Positions 1 through 61,089 of a stretch of DNA of 64,000 nt are shown here, piece after piece. The stretch lies in contig CM075980.1 of the NCBI GenBank assembly GCA_038087875.1, forward strand, positions 71,114,001 to 71,178,000, written 5' to 3'. Source of the DNA: Malacoraja senta. Lineage: Eukaryota. The position numbers were made by a program, and so were the translations under genes. The notes beneath the pieces are model-generated. The model saw nothing but the letters and a program-made list of their open reading frames with translations, was not told the origin of the DNA and searched no databases. Positions within the stretch are counted from its first letter, which is position 1; every line of letters begins with the position of its first letter.

Positions 1-310
1 GACAAGGGGTCATAGCTTAAGGATAAGGGGGAAATCCTTTAAGACCGAGATGAGGAAAAACTTTTTCACACAGATAGTGGTGAATCTCTGGAACTCTCTG
101 CCACAGAGGGTAGTTGAGGCCAGTTCATTGGCTATATTTAAGAGGGAGTTAGATGTGGCCCTTGTGGCTAAAGGGATCAGGGGGTATGGAGAGAAGGCAG
201 GTACGGGATACTGAGTTGGATGATCAGCCATGATCATATTGAATGGCGGTGCGGGCTCGAAGGGCCGAATGGCCTACTCCTGCACCTATTTTCTATGTTT
301 CTATGTTTCC
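1..310 (+). mobile_element. CR1/HER1-type LINE 3' end
   Basis: Encodes the CR1 ORF2 C-terminus (TRGHSLRIRG..FKTEMRKNFFTQ..VNLWNSLP), followed by the 3' UTR and a (CTATGTTT)n tail. Confidence 0.9.
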
Positions 311-7701: not shown

Positions 7702-7904
7702 TTTAGATGAGATATGCATGTGCCTTTAACATAGTGACCTCACACCCACTAACCACTCCCCATATCACAAGTATAACTACCACCTCCACACCCACAGATC
7801 GCTCTCTAGTTCCTGTGACAGACCACGTACAGCTAGTGCAATGTATAATGTCCAGTATGAATAAAGATAGTAAAGTAACGATGCCTCGTTATCAATCCTT
7901 TACA
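7702..7904 (+). repeat. 5' LTR
   Basis: Identical by eye to 12239-12441 except at base 2 (TT.. instead of TG..); ends ..TTTACA; contains AATAAA. Confidence 0.95.
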
Positions 7905-7917
7905 TGGTGTCAAATAA
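7905..7917 (+). promoter_or_regulatory. Primer binding site (tRNA-Leu-like)
   Basis: TGGTGTCA directly abuts the 5' LTR and resembles the tRNA-Leu PBS TGGTGTCAGAAGT over its first 8 nt. Confidence 0.7.
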
Positions 7918-7996
7918 CTTACCTTGCGCCTCCCGTTTATCGGTTTATCATTTAATTTTGACCCAGTTTTTGTTTCCCCCCCTAACTGTTTTTGTT

Positions 7997-10651
7997 ATGG
8001 CCTCTTCTGCCCGTAAGCCCGATGCGCTCGTTTTCGATTTCGACATCGCCCTACGATGGGACATATTCAAACGCGACTTTGAACACTATTTTACGATTGC
8101 CCATCCTGGCGCCACCGACGCTCTAAAAGCCTCGCTGCTTCTCAACTTGGCTGGTCCCAACGCCTTGACTCGCTCGGACTTCTTCGTCTACGCTCCTGGA
8201 GAATCAGCTCGGGACCCGGCATGTCTGTTGGCTAAGTTTGACGCTATTTGTGACATTCCTACTAATTGCATTTTAGAACGTTTTAAACTGTTCGCGCAGC
8301 GTCAGCTCCCTGGGGAATCTGCTGAGAACTATGTCATTGCGCTGCGGGACCTGGGCAGGCGCTGCCGCCTCGAGACGTGGACCCCCGATAATGTCATCAG
8401 GGACCTACTGGTTTACGGTCTCCGTGATGAGAAGCTCAGGTCCGAACTACTTCGCAAGCCGGATCTGACCTTGGCCGATGCAATGCACGCGACTCGCTTA
8501 GCCGACGCTGTTTCCGCGGCGGCGCCGCCGGCTGAACAGGCGATCAACTTTGCCAGCACTCCTAGCTATCTCATGAACGCACCCCAGTCGCGACCCCCGG
8601 TGTCGCTCGCTGCTCGAGGGGGACGCGCCCCGGGGTTCGGTGGTGCCACAAGGGGAGACACCCAGCAAAGGTGCCCTAATTGCAACTTCACAACTCATCA
8701 GTTCAATGTGTGCCCTGCGCTGGGAAAAAACTGCAACTCCTGTAATAAGTTGAACCATTTTGCTGCAGCTTGTCGTTCCCGTGGGAAGCCTGTCGCTGCT
8801 CGAAGGCAAAATTTAAACAACCTTCTACAGTCGGATAATGATCTCAGCTCCCAACACTATTCCGACGAACATTCTGTTCCTACATCTAACTCCTCTCAGG
8901 GGGAAACCAGCTTGTTTACCGTGGTGAACGCACCTGCTATGATAACGGATCCTTCTGTGCAAGTCACTGTGAACAACTCGACCTTCACGGCCAAAATCGA
9001 CACTGGGGCGGTTACCAATGTTATGTCAACATCTCTTTTCAACCAGATAAGGACTAATGAGAAGATATTTTCTCAGAGCTCAAACCTGCATGCCTACGGT
9101 GGGGAGATCCTTACTCCTGTGGGCAAGGCCACACTACACTGTAAGATACTGAAGGCCACTCGGCCCCTCACCTTCTTTCTCCTCAATCGAAGTTGCGTTC
9201 CCCTGCTGGGGATCCAGGCATGCCAGGAAATGGGACTGGTGTCCTTCCACCAGGACATCCGCCACGTGCAGGCTCTTATGGACCCGCTGGCCGAGTATCC
9301 TGACCGCTTTGATGATAAGCTAGGCAAACTACCCTGCAGCTACAAGATTGAAGTGGACCATAAGATCGTTCCTGTGGTCCATGCTCCTCACCGTATTTCC
9401 TTCGCCATGAGGGATAAAGTGGAGGCGACCCTACACAGTATGGTACAAATGGGCGTCCTAAAGGCGGTCGTCGAGCCCACCAGCTGGGTCTCTTCCATGG
9501 TTGTTGCTGCTAAAAAGGACATGAGTGAGATACGCATCTGCATCAACCCCAGAGACCTCAACCTGGCCATTCGGCGCCCTCACTACCCTATGAGAACGGT
9601 GGAAGACGTCGCTGCACGGGTTGGTCCAGCAACGGTCTTTTCGGTCCTCGATGCCAAGAGTTCATTCTGGCAGATACCACTGGACGAGCGGTCGTCCATT
9701 TTGACAACCTTCGCCACCCCCTACGGAAGGTTTCGGTTCCTCCGAATGCCCTTCGGAATCAACTCTGCCAGTGAGGTATTCCAGCGAACCATGGAACAGT
9801 TGTTTTCAGATCTGCCTTGCGCCATAATTGTTGACGACATCCTCGTTTACGGTAAGGATGTTGCCGAACACGATGTCAACCTCCGCCTGATCCTGGACCG
9901 GGCCAGGCAAATCAACTTGAAACTGAACCCCAAGAAGTGCCGATTGCGCGTCTCGGAGGTCACCTATGTTGGACACGTATTCACCGCTGAGGGGCTGAAG
10001 CCAGACCCGCAGAAAACGACTGCCATCTCAGGGATGCCTCCTCCTACTAACGTGGCAGGCCTGCAACGCTTTCTCGGCTTGGTAAACTACCTGGGGAAGT
10101 TCATCCCCGACCTAAGCGAGCTCAGCGCTCCCCTGAGGGATCTGATCAAAAAGGACACTTCCTGGCTTTGGTTACCCAATCATCAGAAGGCATTTGACAT
10201 TCTTAAGTCTAAACTGATCAGCACACCCACGCTCAAGTTCTTTGACCTGCGGCATCCCATTGTCCTCACCTGCGACGCCTCTCAATTCGGACTCGGTGCC
10301 GCCTGCCTCCAGGTCCATGACGGCCTGCAGATGCCTGTCTCATTCGCGTCCCGCACCATGACCGCCACCGAACAGCACTATGCGCAGATTGAGAAGGAGC
10401 TGCTGGCCGTGCTGTTTGCCTGCTCCAAATTCCGGGACTACATCGTGGGCAACACTTTCACCGTTGAAACTGACCATCAACCACTTGTTACCATCCTCAA
10501 CAAATCGATCCATGTGGCCTCATCACGTCTGCAGCGCATGCTGCTGCAGCTCCAGCGTTTCACGTTCACGGTGGTTTATCGTAAGGGGAAGGACATGTTC
10601 GTAGCCGACACGTTGTCTCGCGCCCCGCTGACGTCCACTGCTCGCCACTAA
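7997..10651 (+). CDS. Gypsy Gag-protease-RT-RNase H polyprotein, ending at a premature TAA
   Basis: Likely start MASSARKP at 7997. Two CCHC knuckles (CPNCNFTTHQFNVC, CNSCNKLNHFAAAC), protease IDTGA, RT LDAKSSFWQ/RMPFG/IVDD, RNase H CDAS/YAQIEKE/TDHQPL. Confidence 0.93.
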   Translation: MASSARKPDALVFDFDIALRWDIFKRDFEHYFTIAHPGATDALKASLLLNLAGPNALTRSDFFVYAPGESARDPACLLAKFDAICDIPTNCILERFKLFAQRQLPGESAENYVIALRDLGRRCRLETWTPDNVIRDLLVYGLRDEKLRSELLRKPDLTLADAMHATRLADAVSAAAPPAEQAINFASTPSYLMNAPQSRPPVSLAARGGRAPGFGGATRGDTQQRCPNCNFTTHQFNVCPALGKNCNSCNKLNHFAAACRSRGKPVAARRQNLNNLLQSDNDLSSQHYSDEHSVPTSNSSQGETSLFTVVNAPAMITDPSVQVTVNNSTFTAKIDTGAVTNVMSTSLFNQIRTNEKIFSQSSNLHAYGGEILTPVGKATLHCKILKATRPLTFFLLNRSCVPLLGIQACQEMGLVSFHQDIRHVQALMDPLAEYPDRFDDKLGKLPCSYKIEVDHKIVPVVHAPHRISFAMRDKVEATLHSMVQMGVLKAVVEPTSWVSSMVVAAKKDMSEIRICINPRDLNLAIRRPHYPMRTVEDVAARVGPATVFSVLDAKSSFWQIPLDERSSILTTFATPYGRFRFLRMPFGINSASEVFQRTMEQLFSDLPCAIIVDDILVYGKDVAEHDVNLRLILDRARQINLKLNPKKCRLRVSEVTYVGHVFTAEGLKPDPQKTTAISGMPPPTNVAGLQRFLGLVNYLGKFIPDLSELSAPLRDLIKKDTSWLWLPNHQKAFDILKSKLISTPTLKFFDLRHPIVLTCDASQFGLGAACLQVHDGLQMPVSFASRTMTATEQHYAQIEKELLAVLFACSKFRDYIVGNTFTVETDHQPLVTILNKSIHVASSRLQRMLLQLQRFTFTVVYRKGKDMFVADTLSRAPLTSTARH

Positions 10652-12169
10652 TACGAAACGTCCGAGTTACTAGTACTACGATTGAACTTCGTCCCCTCAC
10701 CACAGATGAAGTCCCTGGTTGAACACACTACCAACGACCCTGCCCTGCAACAGCTGTCTGCCGTCATCCGGCAGGGCTGGCCTGACCGTCGCTCGGCACT
10801 GCCGGCTGGAGCCGTGCCCTACTTCCTGATTCGAGACGAGCTCGTATTGCACGACGGCGTGGTGGTGAAGGGTCACAAAGTGGTCGTGCCCGCGGCGCTG
10901 CACGATCACTATTTTCAGGTCGCACACCGCGGTCACACTGGGGCCGAAGCCACTTTGTCTCTCGCCAAGGCACAGTTCTATTGGCCGGATATGGCAAAGT
11001 ACATCCGGGAGAGGGTCTCCTCGTGTTCCACCTGCAACAGCCGCGCCCCCCATCAGCAGCGTCAGCCGCTTCTACAGCAGCCCGCGCCCGGACTGCCCTG
11101 GATGGCGCTCGCCACAGACATTTTCGAGTGGTGGGGCAAACATTTCCTGGTACTCGTTGACTTCTACTCCAGCTGGTTTGCGGTTGACCGGCTGCCTTCC
11201 GTGACCTCTTCGGCCGTCATCGACAGGTTGGACCCTCACTTTAGCACTTTTGGCCCCCCGGCAAGCCTGCAGTCGGACAACGGCAGCCAGTTCACGAGCT
11301 CCGAGTTTAAAGCGTTCGCTTCCAGATGGAACTTTCGCCATTTCACAAGCAGCCCGGAGTACCCGCAAAGCAACGGTTTGGCCGAGCGCGCGGTCCGCAG
11401 TGCTAAGCACCTGTTGGAACAGTGTGGTGGCATTAACTCCGACTTCCACCTGGCCCTCCTCAGCCTTCGGAACATCTCTCGCGACCCTGCCATGGGTTCA
11501 CCTGCTCAGCGGCTCCTGTCTCGCGCTACCAGGCTCCCACTCCCGGTGGCCCAGCGATCCCTCATACTCTCGGTCCTTCCACCTGCGGCGGTTCAGAAAC
11601 GAATTGCCTTCAGGCAAGACGTCCAAAAGCGGTCCCATGACAGGTCCTGCCACCCGCTGCCGCCCCTCTTCCCCGGTCAAGTAGTCCGTATGCAAACCAC
11701 TCCCGGTCACTCCAAGCTCGCCACTGTCGTCGGCTCTGCGGGGTCGCCCAGGTCCTATTTCGTCGACTACGCTGGGACCATTTACCGACGGTCTCGCCAG
11801 CACCTTCGGCTCGTCTACGAGCCGCGTCCTCCTGCCGCCGATCCCTTTGCTCCCCCGCTGCCTGTTTCCCGTCCGGCCGTTGCCCTGCCCGTGATTCCAT
11901 GCATGCCTCGCTCTGCTCCTCCTTCGCCCCCTCCGCTCCAACACACTCCGACTAGTCCTCGCACGCCCCCCCGCGCTCTTCCCGGTCCAGGCCCCGCATC
12001 CCCTCCGGTTTCGGTGCCGCGATCTCTTCCGTTTCCTCCCGTTTCACCCTTTCAGGTTCGTCTGTCCCCGCTGGTGCCTCTTCCTCCTCCAGGAAGGGTG
12101 GATGGCGAGACGCGAACCCGGGCGGGACGTCTGGTCAAACCGCCTGACCGCTATGGCGATGTTGCCTAG
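10652..12169 (+). CDS. Gypsy integrase, same frame as the upstream ORF and separated from it by one stop codon
   Basis: HHCC (AHRGH..CSTC), DDE motifs (DIF, SDNGSQF, SNGLAERAV), Pro-rich tail ending RTRAGRLVKPPDRY. Confidence 0.9.
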   Translation, partial: YETSELLVLRLNFVPSPQMKSLVEHTTNDPALQQLSAVIRQGWPDRRSALPAGAVPYFLIRDELVLHDGVVVKGHKVVVPAALHDHYFQVAHRGHTGAEATLSLAKAQFYWPDMAKYIRERVSSCSTCNSRAPHQQRQPLLQQPAPGLPWMALATDIFEWWGKHFLVLVDFYSSWFAVDRLPSVTSSAVIDRLDPHFSTFGPPASLQSDNGSQFTSSEFKAFASRWNFRHFTSSPEYPQSNGLAERAVRSAKHLLEQCGGINSDFHLALLSLRNISRDPAMGSPAQRLLSRATRLPLPVAQRSLILSVLPPAAVQKRIAFRQDVQKRSHDRSCHPLPPLFPGQVVRMQTTPGHSKLATVVGSAGSPRSYFVDYAGTIYRRSRQHLRLVYEPRPPAADPFAPPLPVSRPAVALPVIPCMPRSAPPSPPPLQHTPTSPRTPPRALPGPGPASPPVSVPRSLPFPPVSPFQVRLSPLVPLPPPGRVDGETRTRAGRLVKPPDRYGDVA

Positions 12170-26482: not shown

Positions 26483-27327
26483 TATTCAAGATTCAAGATT
26501 CAAGATATTTTATTAGTCACATTCACATACACCCGGGTGTAGTGAAGTGAAATGCTTTTTGCCATTATGCAGCACACAAAAAAGAGAATACAGACACAAC
26601 ACCAAGAAAGTCTTAACACTGAACATCCCCCCACAATGGCTCCCACCATGAGGGAAGGCACAAAGTCCAGTCCCCAACCCCAGTTCACCCATAGTCGGGC
26701 CCATTGAGGCCTCCACAGTTGCCTCTACGGAGGCCCGATGTTCCAGGCCGTTCTCGCCGGGTGATGTTGCTCCGGCGTCGGGAGAGTCCTCCCAGCGGCT
26801 TGGGAACCCTGGAACGGCCGCTTCCGCACTGGGGGCCGCAGCTTCTGAAGCCAACAAGGCCGCGCCGGTTGGAGCTCCATAACTAGAGATCCCAGGCTCC
26901 CGGTGTAAAGTTCAGCGCCGCCGCCCGCAGCTGGTCGCTCCACAGTCCCGCAGCTCCGTGATGTTTTCCCCAGCGATCCTCAGCTCACCGGAGCTCCAGC
27001 GCGGCGACCCGGGCAAGGCATCGCCCGCCCCGCGATAGCGCTCCAGCGCTGTGCCGCCGCCGAAGCCGAGGTTCTGGGCGGTCCCTGACAGGAAACGCCA
27101 CTCCAGGCCCGCTGGTAGGCCGCGAGGACGGGTCGCAGCTGCAGCCCGGAGAAAAGCTGCCTCTCCGGCCAGGTAGGGACCCTGAAAGGTAGTTTCCCCC
27201 TTCCCCCCCCACACAAAAAAGTCTAGACCTCCAAAACAAAACACTTTACTGACTAAAATAAAAAATAAAGGTGAAAGGACAGACAGCTGCTGGCTGGGCA
27301 GCCGCACACTGGACAGCGCCCCCAGCG
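26483..27327 (-). mobile_element. Composite GC-rich non-autonomous retroposon
   Basis: Homologous end to end with 60219-61089; (TTGAATC)n tail, AATAAA and LINE-like 3' end. Confidence 0.75.
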
Positions 27328-31163: not shown

Positions 31164-33380
31164 AAATGCAGCAGTCAAATTGCACACACCAAAATTCCAA
31201 AAAACAACTGAAGATCAGATAATATGTTTAAGTGATGTTGATTGAACAGTTAATATGAATACTCCCTTCAATAGAGATTTAAAATAAAAACAGGAAATAC
31301 TGGAAGCTCTCAACAGTCACAAAACATCAGCAGAAAGAGAAACAGGTATTACTTCAATACTAGGTCCCTCATAAAATTTAAATTTAGGGTGGTAAAAGGG
31401 TAAAAAATAGGAACAGGATTACGCTATTTGGCCTCATGAGCCTTTATTTCATTCAGTAAGATCGTTGGTGATAGTCCACACCGACCGAAAGTCTGCAATC
31501 CCCTTGGGAGAGTAAATTCCAAAGATTTACCACCCTTCCAGTGAAGACAGGTTCCTGATTACAGTCCAAAATGTTCTTTTCCTCAGGCTTTTGAACTTGC
31601 AATTGCAATGAGTGTGTCTGACAAAAAAAATGAGCACCATGAAAATGCCCTTGTGACTAATTCCAATTTACTCCTCACCATTATTCAGTATATCATTCCC
31701 CAATCATTTAGCATTATTACATCATTTGAACCATCATCAACTCCCAAATTTTGAGCCCCATTTTGTCTTGCAACTTCTTTTTTAGCTATGTGCTAATCCT
31801 TAAACATCCTCATCTTTGCTCTTGTGTTCGCTTTTGCAAAACACTCAGAGGCTGGGCTGATATATGGATGCAATCTGCAATCCCTTTCACCAATCGCTTA
31901 TTTGACATCCACAATGATAATGGCAGCTCAAGGTATAGATTCATTTGGCCGACTGGCAATTTATGCAATTGCATTCCACACCAGTAAACTATTTATTCAG
32001 TAAGATCGTTGGTGATAACTATTTATTGTTGTTTCTGTTAACTGAAACAAAATAGAGAGAATTGACCCTAATGGAAAATAGCAGCTTACCATTATTTTTA
32101 AAAAAAAATCATGTTGCCAAGGATAAGAATGTGAGCTGGGAAAAAGGGCATTGGTTTGCTGATTTGTACTTTGGGTTTTGTCAGAAGTAATTAGTCTGTC
32201 AGTCCCTACCATTACTTCTTCAACAAATAAAGTCTGTGATTTGCCACAAACAGGTGCAAGCCCCAGATTGTTTGAGTCACACATTAAATAAAATAACAGG
32301 CTGTGTAAAGTATAAAAAGAGTCAGTATTCACACAAGAAATGAGAAATTGCACCCCATTAAACTGTTGCTTTTACTACTTTCTGAAATGGCATGGATATC
32401 TAAAAATATTAATGTTCCACTATTATTTCTCAGTTAATGATTTTGGAAATAGCATTTATCTTTTATTCTAAGGAGAGTATCAAACTATTTGAATTAATAA
32501 TGTTTTTTACATTCATATTACATTTTTAACCCCTTTACGATTGGCTATCATACTCTCACATTGATGGTTGGTGTTCTATTCCCTGTGTTAAAAATAACCT
32601 GGAACCACTTGATCAAGTTTAAGGATTAAGGGGATTAAGGATTAAGCACAGTTTAAGGATTAAGGGGAAATCCTTTAGGACCGAGATGAGAAAAACATTT
32701 TTCACACAGAGAGTGGTGAATCTCTGGAACTCTCTGCCACAGAAGGTAGTTGAGGCCAGTTCATTGGCTATATTTAAGAGGGAGTTAAAGCCCTGTCTCA
32801 CTGTGCGAGTTGACCCACGAGTGATCCAGAGTGAAAGACTCGTGGTTGCGTACGAGACTCCAAGTTTATGATCAAGAGTTTCACCGAGTTCCCACAGGTA
32901 TGACTCAAGTTTGCCGTTAACTGTCATTTCTGCGATGTTCCAAGTTCGTCTCCCGAGTTAACAAGTTCCTTTCCCGAGTTACTCTTGAGCCAACCTTCAA
33001 TGAAGGTCTGTTTTAATAAGCAACATCTCCATCCTGCGGCTTTGAGTTAAAGATAGAATTCAGCGCGGCCGCATCTATTGATGTGACCTACAAAGGGAAA
33101 ATGCCAGTGCCAGGGCAGTTATACTGATGATTTGTTTGAAACACACATCACGTAGTTAGAAGACCAGCAGGCGGAGGTTTGCTATATTTTAATTGAATTT
33201 ACTGCCAGGCCTACACATTGCGGGGAGACTGGAGATGAAATCTTTGAATGTGGACGGATGCGCACATCAGATTGTTGGGAGACGGAGCTCATGGTTCGCC
33301 TCCTGAGCTGCTTTGGTGCCCAGGCGTGAGTTGAGGTGGAGGGAGGTTGGGGGGGGGGAGGGGGGGAGGGTCAAACTCAC

Positions 33381-33432
33381 CCATTTGACAGAGGCAGATG
33401 ATTACGAGGATCCAGTGAGACCCGAACTGCAT
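33381..33432 (-). CDS. Putative captured first coding exon encoding a signal peptide (MQFGSHWILVIICLCQM, phase 1)
   Basis: ATG at 33432; 52 nt ending at the consensus donor G|GTGAGT; hydrophobic core; CpG-rich UTR-like sequence upstream. Confidence 0.6.
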
Positions 33433-34424
33433 GGAGAGCCGAGACTGCCCCGCTGGTGGCCAACTTCCCCCTGTCCTCCGTCGCCGCTCCCAGCCGGCCG
33501 GCAGGAGCTGTGCATGGAGCCCGCCACCGGAGTCGAGTCTGACTGCCTGGGCAGCCTGAGGGAGGCAGATGCACCCTGCCCGGGGAGAGGCCGCGGAGAG
33601 ACTGCGGGGGGAGTATCTCACTCTGACTGTGATAGGGAGAGACAGAGGCGCACACACACACACACACGCACACACAGTGTGGAGTTCCTCTGACTGACAG
33701 ACTGTGTGTGGGTGTGGGGGGTGGGACAGAGAGAGAGAGAGACACTACACACACAGGCAGCGTGGAGTACCTTTAACTGTGTGTGTGGGAGAGAGAGACA
33801 GAGGCAGACACACACACACACAACGGGTAGTGTGTACCTCAGTCTGTGTGTGTGTTTAGGGGAGAGAGAGACACAGAGACAGTGTGGACCTCTGACTGTG
33901 TATGAAGGAGATGGGGAGAGCGACAGAGAGAGAGAGGCACAGAGGCCAAGTGGTGTACTTCGGCGTGACTGTGGGTGGGGGGGGGGGGGTGAGAAAGAGC
34001 GCACAGGACCTCGGTCTATCTGTGTGTGTGGGAGGGAAGAGAGACTAAGCAGAATACATCGGTCTTATTGTGTGTGGGGGAGAAAGAGAATGGTGGGGGG
34101 GGGGGGGGAGAGAAAGAGAGAGGTGGTGGGGGAAGAGAGAAATGGGGGAGACGTATATACACACAAAGCAGAGTTTTACTGTGTATGTGGGAGACACAGA
34201 TGGACTTACACAGATGGACTTACCTCGGTCTTACTGTGTGTGGGAGAGAGGGAGAAAGAGACGTACACTCACAGAGGCAGAGTCTCTCAGCCTGTGTGAG
34301 AGGCAGGGAGGGAGAGAGAGACACACACACACAAGGTGGATGTTAAATCTCACCTGCCTGTTTCAGTGACCGGCACCCGCCGCTAGTGAATGAAGACACC
34401 CCCATCTGTCTGCCCCTCCTCTCC

Positions 34425-34565
34425 CTCCACTCTCCACCCTCTCTCCTCCACCCCCCCTCCCTCCTCCAACCCCCCTCCCTCCTCCAACCCCCCCCTCCCT
34501 CCTCCAACCCCCCCCTCCCTCCTCCAACCCCCCCCTCCCTCCTCCAACCCCCCACTCCCCCCCAA
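34425..34565. repeat. C-rich minisatellite (~19-nt unit CCCCCCTCCCTCCTCCAA), G4-prone on the minus strand
   Basis: Tandem units directly visible. Confidence 0.85.
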
Positions 34566-35439
34566 TTTGGAAATGTCATCCCATCACCCATTCCTTCTCT
34601 CCAGAGATGCTGCCTGCCCGCTGAGTTAAAGAGTTCCCACGGTAGACTCACGAGTCACTAAGGTAAACGCACGGGCCACTGCGTTCTTACAACGTGTTTA
34701 AATGTTTCAAATTTTAACCTCAAGAGTACATTTTACTCGTGAAAATGTTTAAACATGTTTGAATTTTTCCAAGAGTTAACAAGTGTCACGGGTACCTGCC
34801 GTTAGCGCCAAGAGTCGCTAAGTTGCGGCCACGAGTTCCGACGTTCCCGCTACGTTAATCGTACGTGATTACCATGAGTTAAATTTGTTTTAAACTCGGG
34901 GTACCTCGTGGGTCAGCTCGCACGGTGAGACAGGGGTTTTAGATGTGGCCCTTGGGGCTAAAGGGATCAGGGGGTATGGAGAGATCCAGGTACAGGATAC
35001 TGAGTTGGATGATCAGCCATGATCATATTGAATGGCGGTGCAGGCTCGAAGGGCCGAATGGCCTACTCCTGCACCTATATTCTATGTTTCTATGTTTCTA
35101 TCAGTAGGGCAGGCATTCAAGACTAGGGAAGTTTGGACAGAATGACTTCAACAGAAAAAACTGGATAAACATCAAGCACCAAAATCCAGCATGGTCATCA
35201 GAATAAAGTTACACACTTCATGTTACTGGACTTTATCTTGCAGTAAAAGTTATTCACGTTACTTGCTTTATTGTTTATCTGTACACTGTGAATGGCTCGA
35301 TTGTAATCATGTATAGACAATAGACAATAGACATTGTCTTTCCGCTGATAGGTTAGCATGTACTGTAACAAAAGCTTTGGTACACGTGACAATAAACTAC
35401 ACTCAACTTGAAGAGCAAGGAAGATAAATTATCTAGCCA

Positions 35440-41669: not shown

Positions 41670-42365
41670 AGGGCCTGTCCCACTTACATGTCCTTGACAC
41701 GCAAATTACGCGACCTCGTAGTCGCGTTGAGCCAAAACGGTCTGGCGAAGGTCGGGCGCGATTTCATGCGTACGCACAGCCGTCTGGAGCGCATGACGTC
41801 ATTTGAAGATGGACACAAAGCTGGAGTAACTCAGCGGGACCGGCAGCATCTCTGGAGAGAAGCAATGTGTGACGTTTCGGGTCGATACTCTTCTTCAGTC
41901 TGAAAAGAAGGGTCTTGACCCTGAAACATCACCCATTCCTTCTCTCCAGAGAAGCTGCCGGTCCCGCTGAGTTACTCCTGCATTTTGTGTCTATCTTCAA
42001 TTTTCTTGGCCCGGCTCTGGGAGTAGAAGTGGGGGTGAATCCGGGCCGCAACGGCCGTGAGCCCCAGGCTGAGTTTGACGATCGTTTGCCTGCTTCTGCT
42101 GCTGTTGGAGGTGAGACATTGTGTCACGCCAGGGTCTTGGGCCTGTCCCACTTTGGCCGTCAGTTCCGCGACAGGCCATTGGCGCTCAAAGATTTTGTTC
42201 ACTACAAAAATTTCGGAGCCCCGCGCGATGTCGTGCACAACTACATACCCCTCCGCGCTTCTAAGTGGGACCGGCCCCGCGCGGCCATACGATGCCCGCG
42301 CGCCTCAACGCGACCACGAGATCGCGTAATTTGCGTGCCAAGGACACGTAAGTGGGACAGGCCCT
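41670..42365. mobile_element. Harbinger-type MITE (696 bp) carrying a PLE hairpin (41805-41998)
   Basis: ~60-bp TIRs starting AGGGCCTGTCCCACTTAC; TAA TSD; paralogous to 47147-47840. Confidence 0.9.
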
Positions 42366-45335: not shown

Positions 45336-45505
45336 TAGGAAGGAGCTGCAGATGCTGGTTTAAACCGAAGGTAGACACAAAATGCTGGAGTAACTCAGCG
45401 GGACTGACAGCATCTCTGGAGAGAAGGAATGGGTGACTATTCACCCATTCCTTCTCTCTAGAGATGCTGCCTGTCCCGCTGAGTTACTCCAGTATTTTGC
45501 ATCTA
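45336..45505. mobile_element. PLE hairpin element with the hammerhead centre deleted
   Basis: Inverted arms meet at GGGTGA-CTAT-TCACCC. Confidence 0.75.
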
Positions 45506-46296: not shown

Positions 46297-46492
46297 AGGG
46301 GTGCAGCAGCATCTATGGAGCAAAGGAAATAGGCAACGTTTTGGGCCGAAACCCTTCTTCAGACTGAAGAAGGGTTTCGGCCGGAAACGTTGCCTATTTC
46401 CTTCCCTCCATAGATGCTGCTGCACCCGCTGAGTTTCTCCAGCACTTTTGTCTACCTTCGATTTTCCAGCCTCTGCAGTTCCTTCTTAAACA
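46297..46492. mobile_element. PLE hairpin element with back-to-back hammerhead cores, nested in a V-SINE
   Basis: 11-bp TSD CCTATTGTGTA (46286-46296, 46493-46503); centre CCCTTCTTCAG-A-CTGAAGAAGGG. Confidence 0.8.
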
Positions 46493-47146: not shown

Positions 47147-47840
47147 AGGGCCTGTCCCACTTACGTGTCCTTGGCACGCAAAGTACGCGACCTCGTGGTC
47201 GCGTTGAGCCGCGACGGTCCCGCGAAGGTCGCGCACGACTTCATTCGACTGCACAGCCGTCTGGAGCGCGTGACGTCATTTGAAGATGGACACAAAGCTG
47301 GAGTAACTCAGCGGGACTGGCAGCATCTCTGGAGAGAAGCAATGGGAGACGTTTCGTGTCGAGACTCTTCTTCAGTCTGAAAGAAGGGTCTTGACCCGAA
47401 ACGTCACCCATTGCTTCTTTCCAGACATGCTGCCGGTGACGCTGAGTTACTCCTGCATTTTGTGTCTATCTTCGATTTTCTTGGCCCCGCTCTGGGAGTA
47501 GAAGTGGGGGCGGATCCGAACCGCAACGGCCGTGAGCCCCAGGCCGAGTTCGGCGATCGTTTGCCTGCTTCTGCTGCTGTTGCAGGTGAGACGTTGCGTC
47601 TCGCCAGGGTTTTGAGCCTGTCCCACTTTGGCCGTCAGTTACGCGACAGGGCGTTGGCGCCTGAAGATTTCGTTCGCTACAAAAATTTCGGAGCCCCGCG
47701 TAATGTCGCGCACAACTACATACCCCTCCGCGCTTCTCAGTGGGACTGGCCCCGCGCGGCCATACGATGCCCGTGCGCCTCAACGTGACGACGAGGTCGC
47801 GTAATTTGCATGCCAAGGACACGTAAGTGGGACAGGCCCT
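47147..47840. mobile_element. Harbinger-type MITE (694 bp) carrying a PLE hairpin (47282-47473), inserted in a V-SINE
   Basis: Same TIRs and interior as 41670-42365; flanked by TAA/TTA; splits the SINE motif GCC-TTA-CAGCGCC. Confidence 0.9.
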
Positions 47841-51834: not shown

Positions 51835-52752
51835 TCGGTGGGGGCGCTGCGAGAATGCTGCCCTGCCAGCAGCATGTTTGTTATTTCTACTTTTTTGTTT
51901 TTTTTTGTGTGTCCAAATGTTTGTTTTAGTGCCTCTCGGTGTGTCTTGTGTGGGGGGTGGTGAGGGGAGGTATGGGAGGAACCGTTTGTGGTCGCCTCCT
52001 CCACGGAGAGGCGGCTTTTTCCATGTCACCTCCCTCGCGGCCTAACACAATGGATTGGAGCGGCCTTTCCCGGAGTCGGGCCCGGAGTTTCAGTAGCAGA
52101 CGCAGCGTGGACTTTTCATCGTGGAGCGGGCGAGCCCTTGCCAGGGGTCGCCAGAAGGGAGTGCTCCGATCGCTGGCCCGCGGACTGTTACATCCTGAAG
52201 CTGCGGTCTGCGGAGCTTCTAGCCGCAGGCGCGGCATCCGGAGCGTGGGATTCCTTGTTGGGGTTCCCCGGAGAAGCGCTCCGATCGCCGGCCCGCGGCC
52301 TATAACATCCTGAAGCCGTGCTCTGCGGAGCTTCTAGCCGCGGGTGTGGCGTGGACTTACCATCCGGAGCCTGGGTTCCCTCGTCGGGGACAGCCAGAGA
52401 AGAGCTCCGACCACCGGCCTGCGGCCTGCAACATCCTGAAGCCGTGGTCTCCGGTAGGAAACTGCCGATTCCGGACCTCCAAGCGAGTGTGTTCGACCGT
52501 CCCGACGAGAGGGCCTGTACATCCGGCCGCCCGTAGCGGCGACTGAGGAGGTTTATGGCCCCGACCACGGGTGAACAATGGAGGAGGACTGACTGTACTT
52601 TGTGCCTTCCACCACGGTGAAGAATGCTGTGGTGGATGTTTGTGTTAAATCTTATTGTGCATTGTGTGTTCTTTTTTGATTGTGCTGCTGCTGGCAAATT
52701 CATTTCACTGCACTTATATGTGTATGTGACGAATAAAACTGATTGATTGATT
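51835..52752 (+). mobile_element. Composite GC-rich non-autonomous retroposon with ~120-bp internal repeats
   Basis: 5' GGGGCGCTGCGAGAATGCTGCCCTGCCAGCAGC; three ACATCCTGAAGC units; LINE-like 3' end; AATAAA and (GATT)n tail. Confidence 0.75.
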
Positions 52753-60218: not shown

Positions 60219-61089
60219 TTAGATAGATAGATAGATAGATAGATAGACATTTATTGTCACATACACCAAATGGTGCAGTGAAATTTGACTTGCCAATGCA
60301 GCACACAAATAAAGATTACATCCAAGAATTTAACAACATAAAAACATCCCCCCACAATGGTTCCCACTGTGGGGGAAGGCAGCAAAGTCCAGTCCCATCC
60401 CCAGTTCACCCATAGTCGGGGCCTATTCAGGCCTCTGCAGTCGCCGATACGGCAGCCCGATGCCTCAGGCCCTCTCGCCGGATGATGAAGCTCCGGCGTC
60501 GGGTGAACACTCTCAGCGGCCCGGAGTGTCTGGAGCAGCTGCTTCCTCCCAGTAGACCACGGCTCCCGAAGTCCACGAGCCGCGCTGGTCGATGCTCCGA
60601 CTCTGGCAACCTCGTCGTGAGATCCCAGGCTCCGCGGTGTTTAGGGTTCAGTGCCGCCCGCGGCTGGAAGCTCCGCAGACCGCTGACCGCAGACCACAGC
60701 TCCGCGATGTTGGTGCCGGCTGTCACAGCACTCCGGAGCCTACTGCACGGCGACCCGGGTTGGGCATCGCCCACTCCGTGATGGTGCTTCAGCGCTGTGC
60801 CGCCGCCGAAGCTGAAGTCCTGGCCGGTCCCGGCAGGAAAACGCCGCTCCAGTCTGCCCGTAGGCCGCGAGGAAGGGGCGAAGATACGGCTCGGAGAAAA
60901 GCCGCAACTCCGACCAGGTAGGTACTGAGAAAATAGTTTCCCCCTAACCCCACCCCCCACCCCCCACCCCCCACATAAAAAGACTAAAGACCTCCAAAAC
61001 AAACACTTTCAACTAACTAAAAATAAAAAAAGGGTGAAAAAACTAACAGCTGCTGGCAGGGCAGCCATACTCGACGGCGCCCCAGGTGG
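60219..61089 (-). mobile_element. Composite GC-rich non-autonomous retroposon
   Basis: (CTAT)n tail; ATTTAGA at both boundaries (candidate TSD); homologous to 26483-27327. Confidence 0.78.

What the first reader, a model, noticed from the sequence alone, without database searches (positions are those of the whole stretch)
32788..34938. Pack-type Harbinger transposon carrying a host promoter, 5' UTR and signal-peptide first exon
Seen: a 2151-bp unit with 34-bp TIRs and a TTA TSD sits inside a CR1 3' end that rejoins perfectly, so everything between the TIRs arrived by insertion. Between short GAGTT-rich arms lies about 1.6 kb of non-transposon-like DNA. Read on the minus strand it contains a PLE fragment, a G-rich minisatellite, CT/GT microsatellites, a CpG-rich UTR-like stretch, ATG-MQFGSHWILVIICLCQM-G|GTGAGT, then intron-like sequence. 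A 52-nt phase-1 leader exon is typical of secreted or type I membrane protein genes. Inference: transduplication of a gene's 5' end, giving a mobile promoter plus signal peptide plus splice donor cassette that could splice into downstream exons. Pack elements are well known in plants and much less documented in vertebrates.
Basis: partly seen in the sequence, partly recalled or inferred. Interest (0 to 1): 0.85.

Follow-up and report, generated by a model that had tools for sequence, protein, structure and literature searches.

The report
Harbinger-type transposon carrying unidentified filler DNA
A 2.15-kb non-autonomous cut-and-paste transposon really did insert into an older repeat in this skate genome and carries about 1.6 kb of foreign DNA, but nothing I could run shows that this cargo is the front end of a host gene.

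Summary
A 2151-bp unit (32788-34938) has 34-nt terminal inverted repeats (31/34 complementary) and a TTA duplication. It interrupts a CR1 3' end that closes without a gap when the unit is removed (95.4% to a paralogue in the window).

The unit has no transposase ORF. Its two arms are rich in GAGTT motifs. Its core of about 1.57 kb consists mostly of minisatellites, about 0.5 kb of unique sequence, and a fragment of an abundant repeat. That fragment stops exactly at a GAGTTA shared with the arm, which looks like a microhomology junction typical of filler-DNA capture.

The leader-like frame ATG...MQFGSHWILVIICLCQM-G|GTGAGT exists and is unusual: 1.1% of shuffled interiors produce one, and there is no other in 128 kb of both strands. 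Several features count against it being a working exon:
- The Kozak context is poor.
- An out-of-frame upstream ATG overlaps its start.
- CpG observed/expected is only 0.60.
- It shares a 12-mer with the neighbouring minisatellite.
- No protein or family match was found.

The host genome could not be searched, so no parental locus or second copy could be sought.

Verdict: a real Harbinger-type element with Pack-like architecture, whose gene-capture reading is unproven (about 0.25). The scan has already noted better-supported Pack-type Harbingers elsewhere in this genome (ZIC5-like, IGSF10, pentraxin), but not this element.

The parts
32785..32787 (.). Left copy of the TTA target-site duplication, inside the CR1 3' end
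   Evidence: the empty site reads GAGTTAGATG in four paralogous CR1 ends.
32788..32821 (+). Left terminal inverted repeat (34 nt)
   Evidence: 31/34 complementary to the right end; the core occurs only twice in the window, 0.01 expected.
32788..33054 (+). Left arm: TIR plus subterminal region with six GAGTT motifs, a 21-nt tandem pair at 32941-32981, CpG o/e 0.85
33043..33053 (+). 11-mer TGAGTTAAAGA at the left arm/core border, repeated directly at the right border
   Evidence: 2.7% of mononucleotide shuffles share any 11-mer. The arms are motif-rich, so the true chance is higher.
33055..33335 (-). Unique sequence A ('intron-like'); no second exon-like open frame
   Evidence: no match elsewhere in the window; stops in all three minus-strand frames.
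33336..33374 (-). G-rich run (C-rich on the minus strand) directly after the donor
33375..33380 (-). GTGAGT, a consensus 5' splice-site hexamer following the leader-like frame
33381..33432 (-). Leader-like open frame, 52 nt: MQFGSHWILVIICLCQM plus the first base of a Gly codon (phase 1)
   Evidence: it is the only strict hit in 128 kb of both strands, and 1.1% of shuffled interiors give one; it contains the 12-mer GACAGAGGCAGA of the minisatellite.
33433..33620 (-). G+C-rich 'UTR-like' stretch (71% G+C, CpG o/e 0.59) with an out-of-frame ATG at 33515 whose frame runs past the leader ATG to a stop at 33402-33404
33621..34345 (.). Degenerate minisatellite of about 50-150-nt units built from GT, GA and CA microsatellites (CpG o/e 0.29)
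   Evidence: (families D2-D6).
34346..34412 (.). Short unique sequence B
34413..34559 (+). C-rich 20-nt minisatellite, about 7 copies, 89-94% matches (G-rich on the minus strand)
34584..34628 (+). Fragment of an abundant short repeat (12 or more copies in the window). Homology stops exactly at GAGTTA, and the rest of the repeat (CTCCAGCATTTTG...) is missing
34622..34632 (+). Right core/arm border: TGAGTTA belongs both to the repeat fragment and to the arm's own motif (7-nt microhomology). It lies within the second copy of the 11-mer
34629..34938 (+). Right arm: five GAGTT motifs (all in the same orientation as in the left arm), CpG o/e 1.44, ending in the TIR
34905..34938 (-). Right terminal inverted repeat (34 nt)
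34939..34941 (.). Right copy of the TTA target-site duplication

Best explanation
This is a non-autonomous PIF/Harbinger-type DNA transposon.

Shown: it is inserted at a TTA inside a CR1 3' end. It has 34-nt TIRs and GAGTT-rich arms, and it encodes no transposase.

Inferred from what is established for the superfamily: a transposase and a Myb-like ORF1 protein, encoded elsewhere in the genome, recognise the ends and move it.

Inferred from the junctions: the core of about 1.57 kb is filler DNA copied from one or more other genomic places when a break in a short progenitor element was repaired. Repair synthesis would have returned to the element at the 7-nt microhomology TGAGTTA, which a common repeat and the arm share.

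The filler is mostly minisatellite and low-complexity sequence. Its leader-like ATG-to-GTGAGT frame is most likely a non-functional passenger or a fortuitous frame, not a working promoter, signal-peptide and donor cassette. Whether the filler was acquired before the element came to this site or in place afterwards cannot be told from one copy.
For: - TIRs, TTA duplication and a seamless empty site.
- No transposase ORF or Pfam hit.
- GAGTT density is confined to the two arms.
- Arms have CpG o/e of 0.85 and 1.44 against 0.34 for the core, so arms and core have different histories.
- The repeat fragment is cut on both sides and ends exactly at GAGTTA, which is also the arm motif.
- No codon-position G+C bias in any core ORF.
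- Poor Kozak context and an overlapping upstream ATG.
- A 12-mer is shared between the leader and the minisatellite.
- No protein relative.
- Microhomology-guided gap filling is the reported main origin of animal Pack-TIRs (PMC8277862).
- The 3-bp TTA duplication and the two-protein mobilisation of Harbingers are described in PMC2836001.
Against: - The strict leader pattern is rare: 1.1% of dinucleotide shuffles of the core produce one, and none occurs in the other 124 kb of both strands.
- It sits directly downstream of the most G+C-rich stretch of the core, as a first exon would.
- Unchecked notes of this scan report Harbingers in this genome that do carry gene fragments, which raises the prior for genic cargo.
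- No second copy of the family was available, so the arm/core borders and the microhomology rest on this one copy.
Confidence: 0.6

Rival explanations
1. One reading: the core is a transduplicated 5' end of a host gene for a secreted or type I membrane protein (promoter, 5' UTR, 52-nt phase-1 leader exon, start of intron 1). The element would then be a true Pack-type Harbinger that could donate a promoter, signal peptide and splice donor to downstream exons.
For: - Leader-like frame with a 9/10 hydrophobic core and a perfect GTGAGT, the only one in the window.
- 1.1% chance under shuffling.
- G+C-rich stretch directly upstream.
- Pack-type Harbingers with coding cargo are noted elsewhere in this genome (unchecked by me).
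- Pack-MULEs in rice favour G+C-rich gene parts, and a subset carries promoters (PMC5861414).
Against: - No parental protein or family was found.
- T at -3 and C at +4 around the ATG, and no basic residue before the hydrophobic core.
- An out-of-frame ATG at 33515 overlaps the start.
- CpG o/e is only 0.60 over leader plus 'UTR'.
- The supposed promoter is 725 bp of microsatellite units.
- 12 of the 52 nt are a motif of that array.
- With a looser definition, 19% of shuffles and 21 other places in the window qualify.
- The pattern was picked after reading the sequence.
Confidence: 0.25
2. The core is the ordinary interior of this Harbinger family: a deletion derivative of an autonomous element, or a family-specific spacer swollen by microsatellite expansion. 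Nothing was captured.
For: - Non-autonomous elements often keep non-coding remnants.
- Much of the core is tandem repeat that could have expanded in place.
- No comparator copy is available to exclude this.
Against: - The core holds a doubly truncated fragment of an unrelated, abundant repeat, ending at the arm border.
- There is no trace of transposase or Myb-like coding sequence.
- CpG o/e differs sharply between arms and core.
Confidence: 0.1
3. The filler was added in place. A short element of about 0.58 kb inserted here first and was later broken and repaired with ectopic template. The 2151-bp unit therefore never moved as a whole and is a single-copy Pack-TIR. This is compatible with the best explanation and concerns only the order of events.
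For: - Tan et al. (PMC8277862) report that most of 370 animal Pack-TIRs are single-copy and formed by transposition-independent gap filling with microhomology at breakpoints.
- There is a microhomology and an 11-mer direct repeat at the two borders.
- No second copy was seen.
Against: - No donor sequence lies within the 64-kb window, although such events favour nearby templates.
- Notes of this scan report multi-copy Pack-type Harbingers in this genome (unchecked).
Confidence: 0.3
4. Assembly artefact: low-complexity sequence joined two unrelated reads inside a short element.
For: The core is full of G-runs, C-runs and microsatellites, which are hard to assemble.
Against: - There are no N in the window.
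- Both borders fall in complex sequence.
- Arms, TIRs and TSD are coherent.
Confidence: 0.03

Closest known systems
Non-autonomous PIF/Harbinger elements (Tourist-like MITEs such as mPing; zebrafish Harbinger3N_DR)
   Same: 3-bp TTA target duplication, terminal inverted repeats, no coding capacity, and repeated subterminal motifs that could be bound by the Myb-like ORF1 protein (PMC2836001).
   Different: At 2.15 kb it is far larger than a MITE, because of a core unrelated to the arms. Its autonomous partner is unknown. The subterminal GAGTT motifs all point the same way in both arms.
Pack-TIR elements of animals (Tan et al. 2021, PMC8277862)
   Same: A TIR element with non-transposon filler between its ends, microhomology at a breakpoint, and apparently a single copy.
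   Different: That catalogue requires an identified parental copy of the captured sequence, and none could be sought here. PIF and Harbinger are not mentioned in that paper's main text.
Pack-MULEs and other Pack-TYPE elements of plants (PMC5861414, PMC8903248)
   Same: Preference for G+C-rich cargo. A minority carry promoter or 5' sequences of genes.
   Different: Different superfamily and kingdom. Plant cases are defined by clear homology to annotated genes, which is missing here.
Other Pack-type Harbingers noted by this scan in the same skate genome (ZIC5-like, IGSF10, pentraxin cargo)
   Same: Same genome, same kind of element, similar size (2.7-4.5 kb).
   Different: Those carry hundreds of codons with recognisable homology. 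This one has only a 17-codon frame without any relative. I could not compare their arms with these.

Membership tests
PIF/Harbinger superfamily, non-autonomous member | 3-bp target-site duplication of the form TWA (TTA/TAA) | tested here: met
   TTA lies on both sides, and the empty site is confirmed against four CR1 paralogues. A 2-bp TA reading would put the TIRs out of register by one base. This is only one insertion, so a preference cannot be shown.
PIF/Harbinger superfamily, non-autonomous member | Terminal inverted repeats at the exact ends | tested here: met
   31/34 complementary; unique in the window.
PIF/Harbinger superfamily, non-autonomous member | Ends shared with an autonomous element that encodes a DDE transposase and a Myb-like ORF1 | not testable with these tools
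   There is no autonomous copy in the window, and the host genome is not in any searchable collection.
PIF/Harbinger superfamily, non-autonomous member | No transposase of its own | tested here: met
   ORFs are low-complexity only and give no Pfam hit.
Pack-type (gene-capturing) TIR element | Internal sequence not derived from the transposon family | tested here: inconclusive
   The truncated foreign repeat, the microhomology junction and the CpG contrast argue for foreign origin. No family consensus is available.
Pack-type (gene-capturing) TIR element | Internal sequence homologous to a host gene, with an identifiable parental copy | tested here: inconclusive
   No protein or family match for any core frame. 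The decisive nucleotide search of the host genome cannot be run here.
Pack-type (gene-capturing) TIR element | Further TIR-flanked copies with the same cargo (for the transposed, multicopy class) | tested here: not met
   No second copy in the 64-kb window. This is a weak test, because the genome itself was not searched.
Signal-peptide first exon of a vertebrate gene | ATG followed by a hydrophobic core and ending at a consensus donor | tested here: met
   WILVIICLC core, G|GTGAGT donor, phase 1.
Signal-peptide first exon of a vertebrate gene | Favourable start context, no interfering upstream ATG, basic n-region | tested here: not met
   T at -3 and C at +4; an out-of-frame ATG at 33515 overlaps the start; no Lys or Arg before the core.
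Signal-peptide first exon of a vertebrate gene | Promoter-type CpG island around the exon | tested here: inconclusive
   242 bp at 67% G+C with CpG o/e 0.60, just at the classical threshold. Many transposons in the window score higher.
Signal-peptide first exon of a vertebrate gene | A protein that begins with this leader | tested here: not met
   phmmer against 1.84 billion cluster representatives returned only three tandem-repeat artefacts. Caveat: a fast-evolving leader may be hidden behind a representative from another species.

The most novel reading that the evidence does not exclude
The element is a mobile cassette of promoter, signal peptide and splice donor. Copied from the 5' end of a secreted-protein gene and spread by Harbinger transposition, it could splice into exons downstream of each new insertion and create novel secreted or membrane-anchored chimeric proteins in a vertebrate.
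Probability: 0.05. Interest if true: 0.75.

Novelty: new member of a known kind. Interest (0 to 1): 0.3.

Why it matters
Gene-fragment capture by cut-and-paste transposons is well documented in plants and only sparsely in vertebrates. A skate Harbinger family that repeatedly picks up host DNA would be a useful vertebrate model for how such capture happens.

This copy adds one clean example of the architecture, with a readable junction: a microhomology at a motif the element shares with a common repeat. It adds little on function, because the cargo has no demonstrable genic origin. If the cargo were shown to be a working gene 5' end, it would be a rare case of a transposon carrying a portable secretion signal.

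Tried and rejected
Searches that found nothing:
- Word-index protein searches with the 128-aa minus-strand and 126-aa plus-strand core ORFs, and with the arm-encoded part of the 102-aa ORF.
- Exact look-up of ten window ORFs in the protein collection: none is on record, so encoding-contig look-ups had nothing to work with.
- phmmer of a 32-residue piece holding the leader against 1.84 billion representatives: three hits, all translated tandem repeats whose scores add up over 4-17 weak stretches.
- Two metagenome scans, one for the TIR and one for the leader DNA.
- Rfam at gathering scores over the window and at E-value level over the element: nothing relevant. The abundant repeat is not called as a hammerhead by Rfam, although its consensus shows CTGAAGA...GAAAC...GTC by eye.
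- Look-ups of the scan's own notes by sequence: blank.

Ideas considered and rejected:
- piggyBac (TTAA) or Tc1/mariner (TA) ends. The right flank has no TTAA, and TA puts the TIRs out of register.
- The right arm as a 5'-truncated full copy of the element (a composite of two elements). Only three short colinear motifs are shared between the arms, at z about 3.
- An immunoglobulin V-type leader, based on a resemblance I recalled to human VH3 leaders. There is no V-exon-like frame after the donor, no octamer upstream, and no database support.
- The inner border of the right arm as an old Harbinger insertion junction into the repeat's TTA. The sequence after TTA is not a TIR of this element.
Full report
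**What is there**

The stretch 32788-34938 is bounded by inverted repeats. The first 34 nt of each end are 31/34 complementary, and weaker complementarity continues to about 45-53 nt. An 18-nt core of this repeat occurs only at these two places in the 64-kb window, against 0.01 expected by chance.

TTA lies directly outside both ends. When the unit and one TTA are removed, the flanks align without a gap to another CR1 3' end at window 28-309 (95.4% over 282 nt). They read FKRELDVALGAKGIRGYGE in frame. Three more diverged paralogues run through the same GAGTTAGATG.

So this is a precise insertion with a 3-bp TTA duplication. A TTAA reading is excluded by the right flank. A TA reading would shift the inverted repeats out of register. 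The window has no N.

**Anatomy**

No frame inside the unit resembles a transposase. The ORFs are low-complexity translations with no Pfam hit and no third-position G+C bias.

GAGTT occurs six times between 32807 and 33044 and five times between 34623 and 34876, all in the same orientation. The window average is 0.45 per 300 bp, and no other part of the window reaches four per 300 bp. This defines two arms, about 32788-33054 and 34629-34938.

The core between them (33055-34628, 1574 bp) contains, in plus-strand order:
- 281 bp of unique sequence.
- A G-run.
- The leader-like frame and a 71% G+C stretch.
- 725 bp of degenerate units made of GT, GA and CA microsatellites.
- 67 bp of unique sequence.
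- A C-rich 20-nt minisatellite of about seven copies.
- A fragment of a short repeat that has at least twelve other copies in the window.

The arms have CpG observed/expected of 0.85 and 1.44, and the core 0.34. This suggests that arms and core have different histories.

**The junctions**

Aligned with eight other copies, the repeat fragment matches from about 34584 to 34628. It stops exactly at GCTGAGTTA, where all other copies continue CTCCAGCATTTTG. It is also cut on its other side, so it is not a nested retroposon insertion.

GAGTTA is at the same time the recurrent motif of the arms. The 11-mer TGAGTTAAAGA stands at both borders of the core, at 33043 and 34622. I read the right border as a template switch at the 7-nt microhomology TGAGTTA. 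This is an inference from one copy.

It fits the gap-filling model that Tan et al. support for animal Pack-TIRs. They report microhomology at at least one breakpoint in 67.6% of cases and find that most elements are single-copy and formed in place (PMC8277862).

The target in the CR1 end is also GAGTTA. An unchecked note of this scan says Harbinger MITEs of this genome favour the TTA of this same repeat. I considered that the right border is an old insertion junction, but the sequence after the TTA is not a terminal repeat of this element.

**The leader-like frame**

On the minus strand, ATG at 33432 opens 17 codons (MQFGSHWILVIICLCQM) plus one base, followed by GTGAGT at 33380-33375.

For it:
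- Among 28 ATG-to-GTRAGT frames of 12-30 codons on both strands of the window, it is the only one with at least 8 of 10 hydrophobic residues.
- Only 1.1% of dinucleotide-preserving shuffles of the core produce such a frame.

Against it:
- With a slightly looser definition, 19% of shuffles and 21 other places in the window qualify, and the pattern was chosen after reading.
- The start context is poor (T at -3, C at +4).
- There is no basic residue ahead of the hydrophobic core.
- An ATG at 33515 opens another frame that runs across the leader ATG to a stop at 33402.
- Leader plus 'UTR' have CpG observed/expected of 0.60, at the bare threshold for a CpG island and below many transposons in the window.
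- The DNA that would have to be the promoter is the microsatellite array.
- Twelve of the 52 nt are the motif GACAGAGGCAGA of that array.
- No exon-like frame follows the donor within the element.

**Search for a parent**

None of the tools holds this genome. Both long core ORFs, the arm ORF, and a 32-residue piece with the leader found no relative. The only three phmmer hits are translated tandem repeats. None of ten window ORFs is in the protein collection. Two metagenome scans were empty, and Rfam sees nothing in the element.

The absence of a hit is therefore weak evidence. The decisive nucleotide search of the host genome remains to be done.

**Most likely explanation**

This is a non-autonomous Harbinger-type element. 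It would be moved in trans by a transposase and a Myb-like ORF1 protein, as established for the superfamily (PMC2836001). Its core is filler DNA acquired by repair synthesis with template switching.

I put 0.6 on this reading with an inert, probably non-genic or at least non-functional cargo. I put 0.25 on a true captured gene 5' end, about 0.1 on ordinary family interior, and 0.03 on misassembly. Whether the filler was acquired before or after arrival at this site is open; I give 0.3 to in-place acquisition, which is compatible with the main reading.

**Comparison and novelty**

The architecture is that of Pack-TIR or Pack-TYPE elements. Capture of G+C-rich gene parts and occasionally promoters is known for rice Pack-MULEs (PMC5861414). 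Membership in the Pack class in the strict sense needs a parental gene copy, which I could not test.

The scan has already noted better-supported Pack-type Harbingers in this same skate genome, with ZIC5-like, IGSF10 and pentraxin cargo (not checked by me). This is a further, weaker member of a known kind. Its readable microhomology junction is its most useful feature.

Noticed in passing
window 32782-32787 and 34623-34628: The insertion target in the CR1 end (GAGTTA) is the same hexamer as the arms' repeated motif and as the point where the foreign repeat fragment ends. This may reflect an extended target preference or a binding motif of the family's Myb-like protein.
   Followed up: partly
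window 41827-41974, 45391-45486, 47304-47449 (also 29192, 55394, 49592, 46398, 31084, 42870, 1127): An abundant short repeat, often as head-to-head inverted pairs. Its consensus shows CTGAAGA...GAAAC...GTC, like a minimal hammerhead core. Rfam does not call a hammerhead and gives only sub-threshold hairpin matches.
   Followed up: partly
window 7904-12169 (+): A seemingly intact LTR-retrotransposon pol region: a 915-aa ORF with protease, reverse transcriptase and RNase H, followed by a 495-aa ORF with integrase zinc-binding and core domains. It is CpG-rich, hence probably young.
   Followed up: partly
window 46300-46426: A strong hairpin that matches several microRNA precursor models on both strands, well below their gathering scores (mir-559, mir-722, mir-2131). 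It is probably a palindromic repeat rather than a microRNA gene.
   Followed up: no
window 26500-27300, 51900-52700, 60300-61000: Three G+C- and CpG-rich blocks (65-71% G+C, CpG o/e about 0.9-1.0). At least the first and third hold ORFs with related peptide stretches on the minus strand. This may be the 5' part of a repeat family.
   Followed up: no
window 33387-33398 and 33797-33808: The exact 12-mer GACAGAGGCAGA is shared by the leader-like frame and the minisatellite, with looser copies at 33557 and 34269. The array's motif thus reaches into the supposed exon.
   Followed up: yes
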